In this document: in pieces, positions 34,794-64,000 of the stretch
Position numbering within the stretch: the stretch's first letter is position 1
Layout: each line of letters starts with the position of its first letter
Origin: Glycera tridactyla
Lineage: Eukaryota
Length of the DNA: 64,000 nt
Assembly: GCA_965644265.1 (NCBI GenBank)
Contig: OZ286461.1
Location: 89,218,001-89,282,000, forward strand
Reading direction: 5' to 3'
The notes under the pieces: model-generated
The model's input: the letters and a program-made list of their open reading frames with translations, nothing else
Database searches by the model: none
Told to the model about the DNA's origin: nothing
Position numbers and translations under genes: made by a program

Positions 34794-37177
34794 ACATATA
34801 TATACATGCAGGTACATACACAAACTCATAACCCCGCCCGAACCCCCATATGTGCAAGCACACACCCCACACCCCCACACACACATGAACACACAAAACT
34901 TCTCCATCCCGCTACCCCCCCCCCCAATACCCATCCCCTAACCCCATCAACCACCTCTTACACCCACCACCCACCAATCCCCCCAACCCTCCCCAACACC
35001 CACACACAAACTCCTCCACCCCTACCCCACCATCCCCACTCCACATGCACACACACACACCAAACATCCCCCGTCCCACCCCCAACCCCCATACACACCC
35101 AAACTCCTCCAACCCCATCTTGGCCCCCATCCCCTACCCCCACCCAACCACCCATCCAAACTCCTCCAAGCTTCCCCGGCCCCCACACACCCGGGCCCCT
35201 CAACCCCACACCCCCTACTCCCCCAAACACGTGCACACTTCTCCATCCCCCAATCCACCTCTCACACACATATGCCCACACACAGCCGAACTCCTTCAAC
35301 CCCCATCCCCGCGGCCACATCCTACACCCAACAATCCCTCACCTCTAACCCTCTCCCCCCCCCCCCCCCCCCCCACACACACACCAAAACTCCAACACCC
35401 GCCCGGCCCCACCCAACCCCACACACAAATGTGCACACACACCCAAACTCCTCCACCCCCATCCCTGGCCCCACCCTCTACCCCACCCACCCATCCCCTT
35501 CCCCGGCCACACCCCCTACCCCACCAACCACCTCCTACACCCACCACCCACCCATCCCCCCACACACCAAACTCCTCTACCCCTCCCCCACCATCCCCAC
35601 TGCCCCCACCCCACATGCACACACACCAAACATCCCCCGGTACCACCCCAACCCCCTCACACACCCAAACTCCTCCAACCATGCCCCCTACTCCCCCAAC
35701 ACACATGTGCACACTTCTCCACCACCCACCCCCCCTCCCCATCACCGCCACATCCTCTATCCCCACCACCCACCCCTACCCCCAACTACCCACCCATCCC
35801 AAACCCCGCCACCACGCCTCACACAGATGCAAACACACCCAAACTCCTCAACCATCCTCCACATCCCCCCTCCCGCCTCCACCTCCCACACACACATTCA
35901 CACACACACCCAAACCCCTTCATCCCTCTTCCCCCCGGCCACACCCTGTACCCCCACCACCCACCTCCTACACCCACCAATCCCTCAACCCCCCCCCCAC
36001 CCCTACACACATGTGTACACACTGGTGGTGGGTCTATGATCTAATATACTCGATGATTGGTCATTCACATCGCCGAACCAAGCGCTTACTTGCGGAAGTC
36101 AACAATCAATTTAATCCGAATAATCATCTAACAAAATTCGGGCTGAAATATCCGTCATATATCAGCAAATTTATCGCCAAAATTTAGGCAGAAAGCGGTT
36201 TTATTTGTTCGCAGGTGGAGAAACAAAACTCCAGCCGCCATTTTGATTGTTTACAATCCGATAGTTTTGAAAAAGACCGCCGCAAGGCAATAGTGCTACA
36301 TGCGCGATTAGTTCCCGGCCGAACCGCCAGGTGGGGGTGGCTAAGTCTGGTTCCTGGACCAACCACTAGATGTCAAAAAGCTCGGCGCGCCAACCGATTG
36401 TAAGCAATCATTGGTTGGTTGGTTGATCCCAACTGATGATCGATTGCGAAGAGCCAACCGATTCCCAACACTAGTACACACCCTCACCCCCTCCACCCCC
36501 ATCCCTGGCCCCCACCCACCCACGCACCCAAACTCCTCCAACCCCCCCCCCCACACTGACCTCCACACACACACATGTGCACACACACCAAAACTTCTCC
36601 ACCACCCCAATACACACGGCTGTTTGTGTAGAGGTAGGGTGTTGGGGGGGGGGGGGGATATATTCATATCTTGGTAGACAAAGTGGAGGAGTAGAGAAAC
36701 CAACACAGCCCTAATGAGGTATTGCATAACACAAGACAAGAACAACAGAAGCATGTTGGTTACTGGGAGAGCCTTCCCAACAATGAAAGGACAGTCAGAG
36801 AAATGGTGTACATTCCTTGTGGTCTTATGCAATACAGACAGAGTGAATGGGTTCAGCTCTCACAAAAAAATTCAAACTCACAAATTCTTCTTTTCACTCA
36901 AAATTGCCCAATAATATGGGGTGGATTATGAAAAAAGAATGCACCCATGTTGTTGTCCAACTACTTATGCATATGTACACCAAATTTGAAGAATGTAAGT
37001 GCAATATCAACTAAGGGAGGCTTTGAAGAAAAACTTGTACGCAAAACTTTGACCTAAAAGTTTACGTTCTCCGAAGTGATGACCGGACAGATGGACAGAC
37101 GGACAGATGCAACCAAACGGACAGACCACCTGCATCATCACATAGACTCGCATTTTGCTTCGCATGCAAGCCAAAAA
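34662..37177 (-). mobile_element. Second full copy of the same HINE family with a greatly expanded C-rich array and a nested hAT MITE
   Basis: AACAAG terminus; GGCTTGCATGC (34684) / GCATGCAAGCC (37162); conserved core homologous to 22318-22746. Confidence 0.75.
36023..36473. mobile_element. hAT-type MITE
   Basis: 8-bp TSD GTACACAC (36015-36022 and 36474-36481); TIR TGGTGGTGGG...CCCAACACTA. Confidence 0.85.
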
Positions 37178-37931: not shown

Positions 37932-57440
<19,509 letters not shown>

Positions 57441-58639: not shown

Positions 58640-59127
58640 ACGATTCATATCCTTTGAAAAAGCCAAATGTCTAAGAAAATCAAAAATGTTTTTTATGTAG
58701 GCATCCTTAAATAACTCTTACATGTCTTGAACATCATAATGGGTGATTCTTGTCGGTGCAAAGTCTGAACATTCAAGTAGAATATGCTTGACAGTCGGCT
58801 GGCACTGACATGCTGTGCACTCTGGTGGATCCTCTCTTTTCAGAAGATAGCTATGAGTCAGATGAGTATGACCTATTCTCAGGCGAGACAGGACAATCTC
58901 TTCTCGTCTACCCTGATGTCTTTGAATCCATCTACCTTTGACAAGTGGTCTGAAGCTATGGAGCTTATTCTTATCCTCCTTATCCCATCTCTTCTGCCAT
59001 AGATTATCAATATATATTTTGATGGAGGATTTGAAATCCAAGTAATGTATTGGCGTTACAGTGATCGGTAAATTGAGCGCTGCTTTTGCAGCTCTATCAG
59101 CCGCTTCATTGCCTGGTATTCCCCTAC
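58640..59127 (-). pseudogene. Decayed fragment of an RNase H-containing (I/Nimb-group-like) LINE ORF2
   Basis: GIPGNEAADRAAK (RNase H C-terminus), WQKRW, LSRLRIGHTHLTH, C-x2-C...TVKHILLEC zinc knuckle; in-frame stop near 58718. Confidence 0.85.
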
Positions 59128-62100
59128 AATGACAAAGTCCTCCTGGAGGGCGCAAAGGCCGACCAAAGGGCGCCCTTCGACACCACTGTGGCTGCGGATG
59201 AGCTGGCCTCAATGTTCAGCCGAAAAAAAAGTATGGGGCTTACAAGTTGGCTGAGCTGATGACGATCCAAATTGGTGAGTTGTCTTGTGAAATTGTAATT
59301 CACTCACACCATGACAGAATTGTCCTGGGAATACAACATAATAAAGGATGGAAACTATTAATAGAGATGTGTTTATCTTCATCAGTGGAGAACATTTATT
59401 TACATCCAATTAATGTACCGGCCTGCACTGTGGCATAATATCAGTTTGTCCGTCCATGCTTTGGGAAACAATCGTATTCTAAAGACTCTCTTCTCAATGC
59501 AACCATGCTTGGTGTTTTGTTTGTTTGTTTGTTTGAGTTTAACGTCACTTGAACCCACATTGGTTATATTGCAATTACAAGCTAATGTTTTTTGTTGTTG
59601 CAGTGGATGATATGATGGCAGGCAGGACAAGTGAGGGAGGTCATATGAGATGGATGGCCTCCAGAGAAAGCTTTTGCAATAGATAGGTCATCACCCTCGA
59701 AGTTCCCCGGGAGATTGTTGCGCATTGCTGCCATGGCACCAGATCTTGAGGAAGAAGCACGGAGGAGGATCCGGGCCATAGTGGGCGAAAGGGTAGGGAA
59801 TCCGGAAATTGCAAAACAAGCGTTCGAGCTAGCTCGAAAGTATAATTTCTGCAATCCCTACAACAACAAAGTCCTGCTGGAGGGCGCAAAGGCCGACCGA
59901 AGGGCGCCCTTGGACACCACTGTGGTTGCGGATGAGCTGGCCTCAAAGTTCAGCCGAAAGACAAAGTATGGGGCTTACAAGTTGGCTGAGCTGATGACGA
60001 TCCAAATTGGTACGTTGTCTTGTGAAATTTTATTTCACTCACATCATGACAGAATTGTCCTGAAAATACAGCATAATAAAGGATGGAAACTATTAATAGA
60101 GATGTGTTTATCTTCATCAGTGGAGAACATTTATTTACATCCAATTAATGTACCGGCCTGCACTGTGGCATAATATCAGTTTGTCCGTCCATGCTTTGGG
60201 AAACAATCGTATTCTAAAGACTCTCTTCTCAATGCAACCATGCTTGGTGTTTTGTTTGTTTGTTTGTTTGAGTTTAACGTCACTTGAACCCACATTGGTT
60301 ATATTGCAATTACAAGCTAATGTTTTTTGTTGTTGCAGTGGATGATATGATGGCAGGCAGGACAAGTGAGGGAGGTCATATGAGATGGATGGCCTCCAGA
60401 GAAAGCTTTTGCAATAGATAGGTCATCACCCTCGAAGTTCCCCGGGAGATTGTTGCGCATTGCTGCCATGGCACCAGATCTTGAGGAAGAAGCACGGAGG
60501 AGGATCCGGGCCATAGTGGGCGAAAGGGTAGGGAATCCGGAAATTGCAAAACAAGCGTTCGAGCTAGCTCGAAAGTATAATTTCTGCAATCCCTACAACG
60601 ACAAAGTCCTGCTGGAGGGCGCAAAGGCCGACCGAAGGGCGCCCTTGGACACCACTGTGGTTGCGGATGAGCTGGCCTCAAAGTTCAGCCGAAAGACAAA
60701 ACAAGCGTTAGAGCTAGCTCGAAAGTATAATTTTTGCAATCCCTACAATGACAAAGTCCTGCTGGAGCGCGCAAAGGCCGGCCAAAGGGCGCCCTTCGTC
60801 ACCACTGTGGTTTCGGATGAGCTGGCCTCAATGTTCAGCTGAAAAACTAGCTAACTAGTATGGGGCTTACAAGTTGGCTGAGCTGATGACAATCCACATT
60901 GGTGAGTTGTCTTGTGAAATTTTATTTCACTCACATCATGACAGAATTGTCCTGAAAATACAACATAATAAAGGATGGAAACTATCAATAGAGATGTGTT
61001 TTTACCTTCATCAGTGGAGAACATTTATTCCCATCCAATTAATGTACCGGCCTGCACTGTGGCATAATATCAGTTTTTTCCCTCAATGCAACCATGCTTG
61101 GTGTTTTGTTTGTTTGTTTGTTTGAGTTTAACGTCACTTAAACCCACATGGGTTATATTGCAATTACAAGGTAGTTTTTAGTTGTTGCAATGGATGATAT
61201 GATGGCAGGCAGGACAAGTGAGGGAGGTCATATGAGATGGATGGCCTCCAGAGAAAGCTTTTGCAATAGATAGGTCATCACCCTCGAAGTTCCCCGGGAG
61301 ATTGTTGTGCTTTGCTGCCATGGCACCAGATCTTGAGGAAGAAGCACAGAGGAGGATCCGGGCCATAGTGGACGAAAGGGTAGGGAATCCAAAAATTGCG
61401 AAACTAGCGTTCCAGCTAGCTCGAAAGTATAATTTCTGCAATCCCTACAACGACAAAGTCCTGCTGGAGGGCGCAAAGGCCGACCGAAGGGCGCCCTTGG
61501 ACACCACTGTGGTTGCGGATGAGCTGGCCTCAAAGTTCAGCCGAAAGACAAAGTATGGGGCTTACAAGTTGGCTGAGCTGATGACGATCCAAATTGGTAC
61601 GTTGTCTTGTGAAATTTTATTTCACTCACATCATGACAGAATTGTCCTGAAAATACAACATAATAAAGGATGGAAACTATTAATAGAGATGTGTTTATCT
61701 TCACCAGTGGAGAACATTTATTTACATCCAATTAATGTACCGGCCTGCACTGTGGCATAATATCAGTTTGTCCGTCCATGCTTTGGGAAACAATTGTATT
61801 CTAAAGACTCTCTCCTCAATGCGACCATGCTTGGTGTTTAGTTCGTTTGTTTGTTTGAGATTAACGTCACTTAAACCTGCATGGATTATATTGCAATTAC
61901 AAGCTAATGTTTTTTGTTGTTGCAGTGGATGATATGATGGCAGGCAGGACAAGTGAGGGAGGTCATATGAGATGGATGGCCTCCAGAGAAAGCTTTTGCA
62001 ATAGATAGGTCATCACCCTCGAAGTTCCCCGGGAGATTGTTGTGCGTTGCTGCCATGGCACCAGATCTTGAGGAAGAAGCACGGAGGAGGATCCGGGCCA

Positions 62101-64000
62101 TAGTGGGCGAAAGGGTAGGGAATCCGGAAATTGCAAAACAAGCGTTCGAGCTAGCTCGAAAGTATAATTTCTGCAATCCCTACAACGACAAAGTCCTGCT
62201 GGAGGGCGCAAAGGCCGACCGAAGGGCGCCCTTGGACACCACTGTGGTTGCGGATGAGCTGGCCTCAAAGTTCAGCCGAAAGACAAAACAAGCGTTAGAG
62301 CTAGCTCGAAAGTATAATTTTTGCAATCCCTACAATGACAAAGTCCTGCTGGAGCGCGCAAAGGCCGGCCAAAGGGCGCCCTTCGTCACCACTGTGGTTT
62401 CGGATGAGCTGGCCTCAATGTTCAGCTGAAAAACTAGCTAACTAGTATGGGGCTTACAAGTTGGCTGAGCTGATGACAATCCACATTGGTGAGTTGTCTT
62501 GTGAAATTTTATTTCACTCACATCATGACAGAATTGTCCTGAAAATACAACATAATAAAGGATGGAAACTATCAATAGAGATGTGTTTTTACCTTCATCA
62601 GTGGAGAACATTCATTCCCATCCAATTAATGTACCGGCCTGCACTGTGGCATAATATCAGTTTTTTCCCTCAATGCAACCATGCTTGGTGTTTTGTTTGT
62701 TTGTTTGTTTGAGTTTAACGTCACTTAAACCCACATGGGTTATATTGCAATTACAAGGTAGTTTTTAGTTGTTGCAATGGATGATATGATGGCAGGCAGG
62801 ACAAGTGAGGGAGGTCATATGAGATGGATGGCCTCCAGAGAAAGCTTTTGCAATAGATAGGTCATCACCCTCGAAGTTCCCCGGGAGATTGTTGTGCTTT
62901 GCTGCCATGGCACCAGATCTTGAGAAAGAAGCATGGAGGAGGATCCGGGCCATAGTGGGCGAAAGGGTAGGGAATCCAAAAATTGCAAAACTATCATTCC
63001 AGCTAGCTCGAAAGTATAATTTCTGCAATCCCTACATTGACAAAGTCCTGCTGGAGGGCGCAAAGGCCGACCAAAGGGCGCCCTTCGACACCACTGTGGT
63101 TGCGGATGAGCTGGCCTCAATGTTCAGCGGAAAGACAAAGTATGGGGCTTACAAGTTGGCTGAGCTGATGACAATCCACATTGGTGAGTTGTCTTGTGAA
63201 ATTTTATTTCACTCACATCATGACAGAATTGTCCTGAAAATACAACATAATAAAGGATGGAAACTATCAATAGAGATGTGTTTTTACCTTCATCAGTGGA
63301 GAACATTTATTTACATCCAATTAATGTACCGGCCTGCACTGTGGCATAATATCAGTTTGTCCGTCCATGCTTTGGGAAACAATCGTATTCTAAAGACTCT
63401 CTTCCCAATGCAACCATGCTTGGTGTTTTGTCTGTTTGTTTGTTTGTTTGAGTTTAACGTCACTTGAACCCACATTGGTTATATTGCAATTACAAGCTAA
63501 TGTTTTTTGTTGTTGCAGTGGATGATATGATGGCAGGCAGGACAAGTGAGGGAGGTCATATGAGATGGATGGCCTCCAGAGAAAGCTTTTGCAATAGATA
63601 GGTCATCACCCTCGAAGTTCCCCGGGAGATTGTTGCGCATTGCTGCCATGGCACCAGATCTTGATGAAGAAGCACAGAGGAGGATCCGGGCCATAGTGGG
63701 CGAAAGGGTAGGGAATCCGGAAATTACAAAACTAGCGTTTGAGCTAGCTCGAAAGTATAATTTCTGCAATCCCTACAATGACAAAAAAGTCCTGCAGGGG
63801 GGCGCAAAGGCCGACCAAAGGGCGCCCTTTGACACCACTGTGGTTGCGGATGAGCTGGCCTCAAAGTTCAGCCGAAAGACAAAGTATGAGGCTTACAAGT
63901 TGGCTGAGCTGATGACAATCCACATTGGTGAGTTGTCTTGTGAAATTTTATTTCACTCACATCATGACAGAATTGTCCTGAAAATACAACATAATGAAGG
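59127..64000 (+). repeat. Higher-order tandem array of 735/852/741-bp units, each with an exon-like ORF; continues past the window end
   Basis: Unit ATGs at 59733, 60468, 61320, 62055, 62907 and 63648 (spacings 735, 852, 735, 852, 741); partial unit from about 59127. Confidence 0.97.
59733..60009 (+). CDS. Putative repeated coding exon (92 codons, MAPDLEEEARRR...LMTIQI), unknown family; equivalents at 61320-61596, 62907-63183 and 63648-63927
   Basis: GCCATGG start context, open frame, phase-1 donor G|GTACGT or G|GTGAGT; no homologue recognised. Confidence 0.35.

What the first reader, a model, noticed from the sequence alone, without database searches (positions are those of the whole stretch)
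59127..64000. Gene-like higher-order tandem array: each 735/852-bp unit carries a start-context ORF and a splice donor
Seen: at least 6.5 units with ATG spacings 735-852-735-852-741, so a 1587-bp A-B dimer is itself repeated. Every complete unit has a pyrimidine-rich acceptor-like site (ttgttgttgCAG, mutated to CAA in the units at 61191 and 62778), a GCCATGG start and a charged, helix-like ORF (MAPDLEEEARRRIRAIVGERVGNPEIAKQAFELARKYNFCNPY...). Each also has a strong phase-1 donor sequence, which varies between two good forms (GTACGT and GTGAGT). I do not recognise the protein. GNPEIAKQAFELA fits the TPR helix-B spacing G15-A20-F24-A27, which is a weak inference. Options: an array of alternative or repeated exons for a gene lying to the right, a rapidly expanding orphan gene family, or a satellite derived from a gene. 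Caution: a hand count between units 59733 and 62907 gives 13 nonsynonymous and 4 synonymous changes, near neutral expectation, so purifying selection is not shown.
Basis: partly seen in the sequence, partly recalled or inferred. Interest (0 to 1): 0.78.

Follow-up and report, generated by a model that had tools for sequence, protein, structure and literature searches.

The report
Satellite built from a gene's tail
A 29-kb run of about 39 head-to-tail copies was made from the last two exons and the intron between them of a gene on another chromosome; the copies carry a formerly real coding frame but now drift like junk DNA, so this is an ordinary gene-fragment satellite, not a new gene family.

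Summary
Units start at 59587, 60322, 61174, 61909, 62761 and 63502 (spacings 735/852/735/852/741). The array runs 24 kb past the window: 29.3 kb in all, 38 full units plus one partial, and it is the only such array in the 2-Gb genome.

Each unit is a rearranged copy of two neighbouring exons and a shortened intron. The intact versions lie on contigs C10 and C1, 2.5 kb downstream of, and in phase with, the last catalytic-domain exon of a ubiquitin-specific protease (USP) gene. The GCCATGG start lies in a 38-nt junction with no counterpart at the parent locus.

The reading frame was truly coding. Differences fixed between parent and array are 17 synonymous to 5 nonsynonymous (p = 7e-7). Inside the array the changes are 14 synonymous to 43 nonsynonymous, which is neutral (Fisher p = 2.7e-5 for the contrast). 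Diversity in the ORF is no lower than in the intron part. Fifteen of 38 units carry stops or frameshifts, and 10 have lost the acceptor.

No upstream exons or host gene lie within 59 kb to the left or 15 kb to the right, and both flanks are transposon debris. The protein has no homologue, Pfam family or fold match, and the TPR idea is unsupported.

Verdict: a gene-fragment-derived macrosatellite decaying neutrally. No RNA data were available.

The parts
58718..59127 (-). 5'-truncated 3' end of an abundant LINE ORF2. It forms the left border of the array.
   Evidence: Genome search with its 135 aa gives at least 8998 candidate copies at 91-93% identity, many inside open frames of 1227-1233 aa. 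The array homology starts at 59122.
59122..59586 (+). Partial first unit (unit positions 270-735)
   Evidence: BLAST of unit 1: 96.4% identity over 466 nt.
59587..60321 (+). Unit 1, subtype A, 735 bp (the reference unit)
59587..59603 (+). 3' end of the parental intron with its acceptor (ttgttgttgCAG)
   Evidence: 17 of 17 identical to C10:78224590-78224606 (gene strand) in the local alignment.
59604..59701 (+). Copy of the start of the parental terminal exon (exon B). In the phase set by the upstream donor it reads VDDMMAGRTSEGGHMRWMASRESFCNR, then a stop (TAG at 59684-59686).
   Evidence: Aligned to the C10 terminal exon with a 1-nt indel that changes the frame after codon 16.
59702..59739 (+). 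38-nt junction of unknown origin. It holds the GCCATGG start (ATG at 59733-59735).
   Evidence: No counterpart in 47 kb around the parent locus. The only genome matches are the 38 array units.
59740..60009 (+). Copy of parental exon A: the CAG acceptor at 59740-59742, then a 267-nt, phase 1-1 exon at 59743-60009
   Evidence: 88% amino-acid identity to C10:78225588-78225857 and to the C1 copy. Homology begins exactly at the CAG. Fixed differences are 17 S: 5 N.
60010..60238 (+). Donor (GTACGT) and first part of the parental intron
   Evidence: BLAST of the unit to C10 and C1 covers unit positions 154-664 at 90-91%.
60239..60315 (+). 5' fragment of a dispersed SINE/MITE-like repeat. It replaces about 740 bp of the parental intron.
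   Evidence: Many 53-77-nt matches at 87-96% all over the genome, 825 candidates. Fuller copies of the same repeat sit at the right edge of the array.
60322..61173 (+). Unit 2, subtype B, 852 bp: the 150-bp internal duplication puts a stop at codon 125, before the donor
61174..61908 (+). Unit 3, subtype C, 735 bp; acceptor mutated to CAA
61909..62760 (+). Unit 4, subtype B, 852 bp; ORF cut short as in unit 2
62761..63501 (+). Unit 5, subtype D, 741 bp; acceptor mutated to CAA
63502..64000 (+). Unit 6, subtype E (696 bp in full), with a 3-nt in-frame insertion; it runs off the window. The array continues for 24.4 kb.

Best explanation
This is a macrosatellite made from a piece of a gene.

Shown: a segment holding a 267-nt coding exon, its downstream intron and the first ~100 nt of the terminal exon was copied to C7. 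Intact versions of that segment survive on C10 and C1. The intron was shortened by a deletion next to a SINE-like insertion. The piece was then amplified head to tail to about 39 copies (29.3 kb). The mosaic of six unit subtypes and the unique, more diverged units at the right end are what repeated unequal crossing-over would leave (inferred).

Shown: the splice sites and the ORF are inherited from the parent, and the ATG comes from the 38-nt junction created when the unit was formed.

Shown by the substitution pattern: the copies are not maintained as coding sequence. They accumulate nonsynonymous changes, stops, frameshifts and splice-site losses at the neutral rate.

Inferred from position, strand and phase only: the parent exons are the C-terminal tail of a USP deubiquitinase gene.
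For: Parent loci: C10 and C1 match unit positions 154-664 and 1-113 in the order exon A, ~990-bp intron, exon B, with an AG acceptor and a GTAAGT donor. The right edge of the array still continues into the part of the parental intron that the units lack (92.7% over 165 nt).

Selection: fixed parent-versus-array differences are 17 S: 5 N, with 15 of 22 at third codon positions (binomial p 7e-7 and 9e-4). Without CpG sites the count is still 10: 3 (p 2e-4). Within the array it is 14 S: 43 N (p 0.88 against the neutral 0.26). Fisher p is 2.7e-5 for the contrast, and 1.7e-4 using only the 23 gap-free units.

Nucleotide diversity is 0.045 in the ORF against 0.035 in the intron part. By codon position it is 0.033, 0.050 and 0.054.

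Fifteen of 38 units are broken, 10 of 38 acceptors are lost, and the longest run of intact exons is 4.

There are no USP or other partner exons in the window, and only transposon remnants to the right.

USP link: Pfam UCH matches the His-box exon at E 5.9e-10. The next exon ends '...GYILLFK G|gtgagt', a phase-1 donor that matches the phase-1 acceptor of exon A.
Against: No RNA data could be consulted, so transcription of the array is not excluded.

Twenty-three of 38 units still have an ATG, an open frame and a donor. With a stop fraction of about 3-4% per substitution and roughly 2% divergence per lineage, that is about what neutral decay predicts.

Without an outgroup, the fixed differences cannot be assigned to the parent branch or to the C7 branch. 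The C7 copy may therefore have been under constraint for a time before it was amplified.

Fixed synonymous divergence (17 of 63 sites) is about four times the fixed intron divergence (11 of 190), which I cannot explain.

The link between the USP gene and exon A rests on strand, distance and phase only.
Confidence: 0.8

Rival explanations
1. An expressed young gene family. Each intact unit would act as a mini-gene: the junction ATG, exon A, an intron of about 330 nt, then exon B with its stop in the next unit, giving a helical protein of about 119 aa.
For: A Kozak-like GCCATGG is present in 36 of 38 units and GT donors in 38 of 38. Nineteen units have an intact ORF followed by an intact acceptor in the next unit. 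AlphaFold gives a five-helix model with pLDDT 70 from the single sequence.
Against: Substitutions within the array are neutral (14 S: 43 N), and ORF diversity is at least as high as intron diversity. Fifteen of 38 units are broken. Only about 46 nt separate the stop of one mini-gene from the next ATG, which leaves no room for a promoter or poly(A) region of its own. The peptide has no homologue among 1.84 billion representative proteins.
Confidence: 0.08
2. A cluster of repeated or mutually exclusive exons belonging to a larger gene. Exon A is symmetric (phase 1-1, 267 nt), so exon-to-exon splicing could build a repeat protein or select one copy.
For: The exon is phase 1-1, and an AG is retained in front of exon A in every unit.
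Against: There are no constitutive exons within 59 kb upstream or 15 kb downstream on this strand. The tract before that AG is not pyrimidine-rich. Stops or frameshifts occur in 15 of 38 copies and the longest intact run is 4. Evolution is neutral.
Confidence: 0.03
3. A non-coding regulatory array. Transcripts or small RNAs from the array, in either sense, would act on the parental USP-linked transcript, as pseudogene-derived small-RNA loci do.
For: The array is 88-90% identical to the parental exon over 267 nt in 38 copies. Neutral change at the protein level is compatible with an RNA-level role. The precedent is Su(Ste)/Stellate in Drosophila (from my own knowledge, not tested here).
Against: There is no inverted arrangement and no known RNA family, and no small-RNA data. 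The genome is full of similar arrays that appear to be by-products.
Confidence: 0.07

Closest known systems
Human ORF-bearing macrosatellites (RS447 with USP17, D4Z4 with DUX4, TAF11-like, CT47); review PMC5687341
   Same: Tens of head-to-tail units, each with an ORF derived from a cellular gene; mosaic unit variants. By coincidence, a USP gene is involved here too.
   Different: Those units (3.3-4.8 kb) hold a whole gene with promoter activity and a functional product. This unit (0.7-0.85 kb) holds only a C-terminal exon, part of a second exon and a shortened intron. It has none of the USP catalytic domain, and its ORF evolves neutrally.
Splice-junction minisatellites ('mirages') noted elsewhere in this genome (earlier findings s1-320735, s1-314060, s1-333356)
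   Same: Tandem amplification of a segment that includes real splice sites, leaving many decoy sites. It is the same repeat-prone genome.
   Different: Those are short units inside the host gene's own intron, with the true exon at one end. This is a large unit containing a whole exon plus an intron, at a different chromosomal site from the parent gene and with no host gene.
Transposon-fragment macrosatellite of this genome (earlier finding s1-340401)
   Same: A young array of protein-coding scraps that evolves like neutral DNA.
   Different: That unit comes from LINE pieces. This one comes from a low-copy cellular locus (three sites in the genome), with a small SINE-like fragment.

Membership tests
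Gene-fragment-derived macrosatellite (tandem repeat) | Many head-to-tail units of hundreds of bp or more | tested here: met
   38 full units plus 1 partial, 696-888 bp each, 29.3 kb in total
Gene-fragment-derived macrosatellite (tandem repeat) | The unit can be traced to a low-copy gene locus elsewhere | tested here: met
   C10:78224493-78225857 and the C1 copy match at 86-91% in exon-intron-exon order
Gene-fragment-derived macrosatellite (tandem repeat) | Copies are free of coding constraint | tested here: met
   14 S: 43 N within the array; ORF diversity 0.045 against intron 0.035; 15 of 38 units broken
ORF-bearing functional macrosatellite (RS447/USP17 or D4Z4/DUX4 type) | A complete gene in each unit | tested here: not met
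   The unit holds one internal exon, a truncated terminal exon and a junction ATG, and no catalytic domain
ORF-bearing functional macrosatellite (RS447/USP17 or D4Z4/DUX4 type) | Transcription and a protein product | not testable with these tools
   No RNA or proteome data were available
Tandem alternative-exon cluster | Flanking constitutive exons of one gene | tested here: not met
   tblastn of the parental open frames from exon B upstream against 104 kb of C7 finds only dispersed repeats outside the array. ORF lists on both flanks show transposon remnants
Tandem alternative-exon cluster | Every copy keeps its frame and splice sites | tested here: not met
   15 of 38 units have a stop or frameshift
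TPR repeat (Pfam clan) | Profile match above the gathering score | tested here: not met
   No match for the 92-aa ORF. TPR_14 scores 14.3 bits against a cut-off of 23.5, and only for the duplicated form. Foldseek against the PDB finds nothing at E <= 0.001
USP/UCH peptidase (PF00443), for the presumed parent gene and not for the array | His-box region matches the profile above the cut-off | tested here: met
   39.6 bits against a cut-off of 23.9, E 5.9e-10, at C10:78228792-78229100. PDB USP chains match at about 1e-4
USP/UCH peptidase (PF00443), for the presumed parent gene and not for the array | Exon A is spliced to the USP exons | tested here: inconclusive
   Same strand, 2.5 kb apart, phase-1 donor to phase-1 acceptor. 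No transcript evidence

The most novel reading that the evidence does not exclude
The array is not inert. Either its intact units are expressed from the junction-born ATG as a young, lineage-specific small helical protein, or the array yields small RNAs that tune the parental USP-linked gene. Either would make it a gene-fragment satellite caught in the act of gaining a function.
Probability: 0.12. Interest if true: 0.55.

Novelty: new member of a known kind. Interest (0 to 1): 0.3.

Why it matters
The array is a clean worked example of how part of a gene becomes a satellite. The parent locus, the breakpoints, the shortened intron and the edge unit that still runs into the ancestral intron are all visible. 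A McDonald-Kreitman-style contrast separates 'was coding' from 'is coding'. It also warns annotators that start codons, ORFs and strong splice sites repeated in an array can be inherited relics. The finding adds one more case to a genome that is unusually prone to amplifying pieces with splice sites.

Tried and rejected
- **Pfam on the ORFs:** nothing significant.
- **HMMER of the parental exon against 1.84 billion representative proteins:** one spurious bacterial repeat protein at E 3e-4.
- **PDB sequence search:** only designed helical repeats at E >= 0.004.
- **AlphaFold plus Foldseek against the PDB:** a five-helix model with no match.
- **Rfam and tRNA scans of the array:** nothing.
- **Source of the 38-nt junction:** no match in the genome outside the array, nor in 47 kb around the parent locus.
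- **Junction as a spliced-on upstream exon:** not supported, because no such exon was found at C10.
- **Antisense 101-aa ORF:** rejected, because the fixed differences fall on its second codon positions (from the frame arithmetic).
- **Read-through of the donor (54 more open codons):** fixed differences there are 4 S: 7 N, which is uninformative.
- **C10 versus C1 comparison of the exon:** too similar to be informative, with 1 mismatch in exon A.
- **Left out by rule:** I did not search or fold a joined exon A plus exon B model. The exons were handled separately by reference.
- **Not run:** the word-index protein search, because the exhaustive HMMER search of the same collection had already found nothing.
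Full report
**Observation**

The window is C7:89218001-89282000 of a 2.04-Gb, 207-contig eukaryotic assembly. Earlier notes on this genome call it an annelid-like invertebrate; I did not verify that. It is not human.

The repeat search finds units starting at 59587, 60322, 61174, 61909, 62761 and 63502, with spacings 735, 852, 735, 852 and 741. A partial unit lies at 59122-59586. The 852-bp form equals the 735-bp form plus a 150-bp internal duplication and a 33-bp loss.

**Full extent**

I fetched 40 kb to the right of the window. The array runs to C7:89306433, making 29.3 kb with 38 full units plus the partial one. A genome-wide search with the ORF finds only this array and two single copies, on C10 and C1.

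Clustering the units at 1.5% divergence gives the subtype order ABCBDEDEFACCBDEFAEFACCBDCCBDEFB, followed by seven unique, more diverged units, GHBIJKL, at the right end. The local A-B dimer is therefore part of a mosaic with a recurring ACCBDEF block. That pattern is what unequal crossing-over produces, with the least homogenisation at an edge.

**Origin of the unit**

On C10, and in a 93-99% identical duplicate on C1, the same sequences lie in a gene-like order:

- an AG acceptor (ttctattttgacAG);
- a 267-nt exon in phase 1-1 that encodes DLEEEARRRIRAIV...MTIQI;
- a GTAAGT donor;
- an intron of about 990 bp;
- the acceptor ttgttgttgCAG;
- a terminal exon that reads VDDMMAGRTCEGGHTRMDGLQRKLLR and then stops.

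The array unit is that segment turned into a circle-like permutation:

| Unit positions | Content |
|---|---|
| 1-115 | End of the parental intron plus the start of the terminal exon |
| 116-153 | A 38-nt junction found nowhere else |
| 154-664 | The CAG acceptor, exon A and the first ~240 nt of the intron |
| 653-729 | The 5' end of a dispersed SINE/MITE-like repeat, which replaces the middle of the intron |

The GCCATGG start sits inside the junction. The parental exon has no ATG and must be spliced to something upstream.

At the right edge, the last unit runs through fuller copies of the same repeat into the part of the parental intron that the units lack (92.7% over 165 nt). This marks C7 as the site of an original single copy from which the array grew.

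The left edge abuts the 5'-truncated end of a LINE with thousands of copies, then microsatellites and masked N runs, which I left alone.

**Parent gene**

About 2.5-3 kb upstream of exon A on the same strand of C10 lie two exons of a USP deubiquitinase. The His-box exon matches Pfam UCH at E 5.9e-10 and PDB USP chains. The next exon ends '...AYAKTTGYILLFK G|gtgagt'. That donor is in phase 1, as is the acceptor of exon A, and the join would read G|AC, which is Asp.

This makes it plausible, but does not prove, that exons A and B encode the C-terminal tail of that USP. None of the USP exons is present on C7.

**Was the frame ever coding, and is it now?**

I compared the C10 exon with all the units. 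At 22 sites the C10 base is absent from every unit:

- 17 are synonymous and 5 nonsynonymous, and 15 are at third codon positions.
- Against a neutral synonymous fraction of about 0.26, the excess has p = 7e-7.
- Without CpG sites the count is 10: 3, p = 2e-4.
- Pairwise dN/dS between units and C10 is 0.11-0.20.

So this is a real protein-coding frame.

Inside the array the picture reverses:

- There are 14 synonymous and 43 nonsynonymous variants, p = 0.88 against neutral.
- Fisher p for the contrast is 2.7e-5, or 1.7e-4 with only the 23 gap-free units.
- Diversity is 0.045 in the ORF and 0.035 in the intron part, and it is flat over codon positions.
- Fifteen of 38 units are broken. The seven B units have a stop at codon 125, before the donor. 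The four F units and unit 35 have a stop at codon 71. Units 12, 33 and 37 have frameshifts.
- Ten of 38 units have lost the exon-B acceptor, and the longest run of intact exons is four.
- A stop arises from about 3-4% of random substitutions, so 61% intact copies is about what neutral decay gives.

The antisense 101-aa ORF is not coding, because the fixed changes fall on its second codon positions.

**What the protein is**

Nothing is known about it. There is no Pfam family, no real hit among 1.84 billion representative proteins and none in the PDB by sequence. A single-sequence AlphaFold model shows five helices at pLDDT 70, with no Foldseek match. The TPR suggestion is not supported.

**Surroundings**

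To the left the window holds LINE reverse-transcriptase ORFs, low-complexity tracts and masked gaps, and no partner exons. In the 15 kb to the right there are only short ORFs and transposon-like remnants. No Rfam family or tRNA lies in the array.

**Conclusion**

This is a gene-fragment-derived macrosatellite. Its gene-like features are inherited (splice sites and frame) or accidental (the ATG), and its copies decay neutrally. It belongs with the many tandem arrays already noted in this repeat-prone genome. It differs from functional ORF-bearing macrosatellites such as RS447/USP17 (PMC5687341).

**What remains open**

- Transcription and small-RNA output are untested.
- It is unclear why synonymous sites differ from the parent about four times more than intron sites do.
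- It is unclear why exon B holds 5 of the 21 C10-C1 mismatches in 81 nt.
- The USP-to-exon-A splice is not confirmed.

Noticed in passing
G000 C1:61671667-61689747 (not in the window): Pfam UCH/USP fragment matches recur every ~5828 bp. This looks like another tandem array, one that carries pieces of the USP catalytic domain.
   Followed up: no
G000, many contigs (e.g. C10:37738629-37739474, C17:56161372-56162217): Full-length, intronless UCH domains lie inside open frames of 1000-3400 aa at many sites. They may be carried by a large mobile element.
   Followed up: no
L008+L003+L007 (C10:78209000-78238999) versus L010+L004+L009 (C1:67807000-67836999): The two regions are 93-99% identical over more than 18 kb. 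Other genes also give paired hits on C4/C28/C11. These could be segmental duplication, homeologues or retained haplotigs.
   Followed up: partly
window 59743-60009 versus L003 6588-6854: Fixed synonymous divergence from the parent (17 of about 63 sites) is about four times the fixed divergence of the adjoining intron (11 of 190). CpG sites explain only 7 of the 17. Unexplained.
   Followed up: partly
L003 5510-5590 (C10 terminal exon): Five of the 21 C10-versus-C1 mismatches in a 2-kb alignment fall in the 81-nt coding part of exon B, and the array copy has a 1-nt indel there. The tail end of the protein seems poorly constrained.
   Followed up: no
window 60239-60315 and L005 4380-4445, 4946-5120: A dispersed SINE/MITE-like repeat that starts (GTTT)n GAGTTTAACGTCACTTAAACC...GGTTATATCGGACTGAAG. 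It has hundreds of copies in the genome (825 candidates).
   Followed up: partly
L005 5790-6176 (+), about 1.3 kb right of the array: An ORF with PRIVIYDHACKLEEYALNRDPRFFLYTKFLVDRFHWKNN, split by apparent introns. From memory it resembles a KDZ/Zisupton-type transposase remnant; not tested.
   Followed up: no
window 54467-56254 (+): A 595-aa ORF that looks like a LINE reverse transcriptase. The identification is by eye and was not checked against Pfam.
   Followed up: no
window 33600-36200: GC 0.59 with GC skew -0.71 and long Pro/Thr/His-rich low-complexity ORFs. Similar C-rich tracts lie upstream of the parental exon on C10.
   Followed up: no
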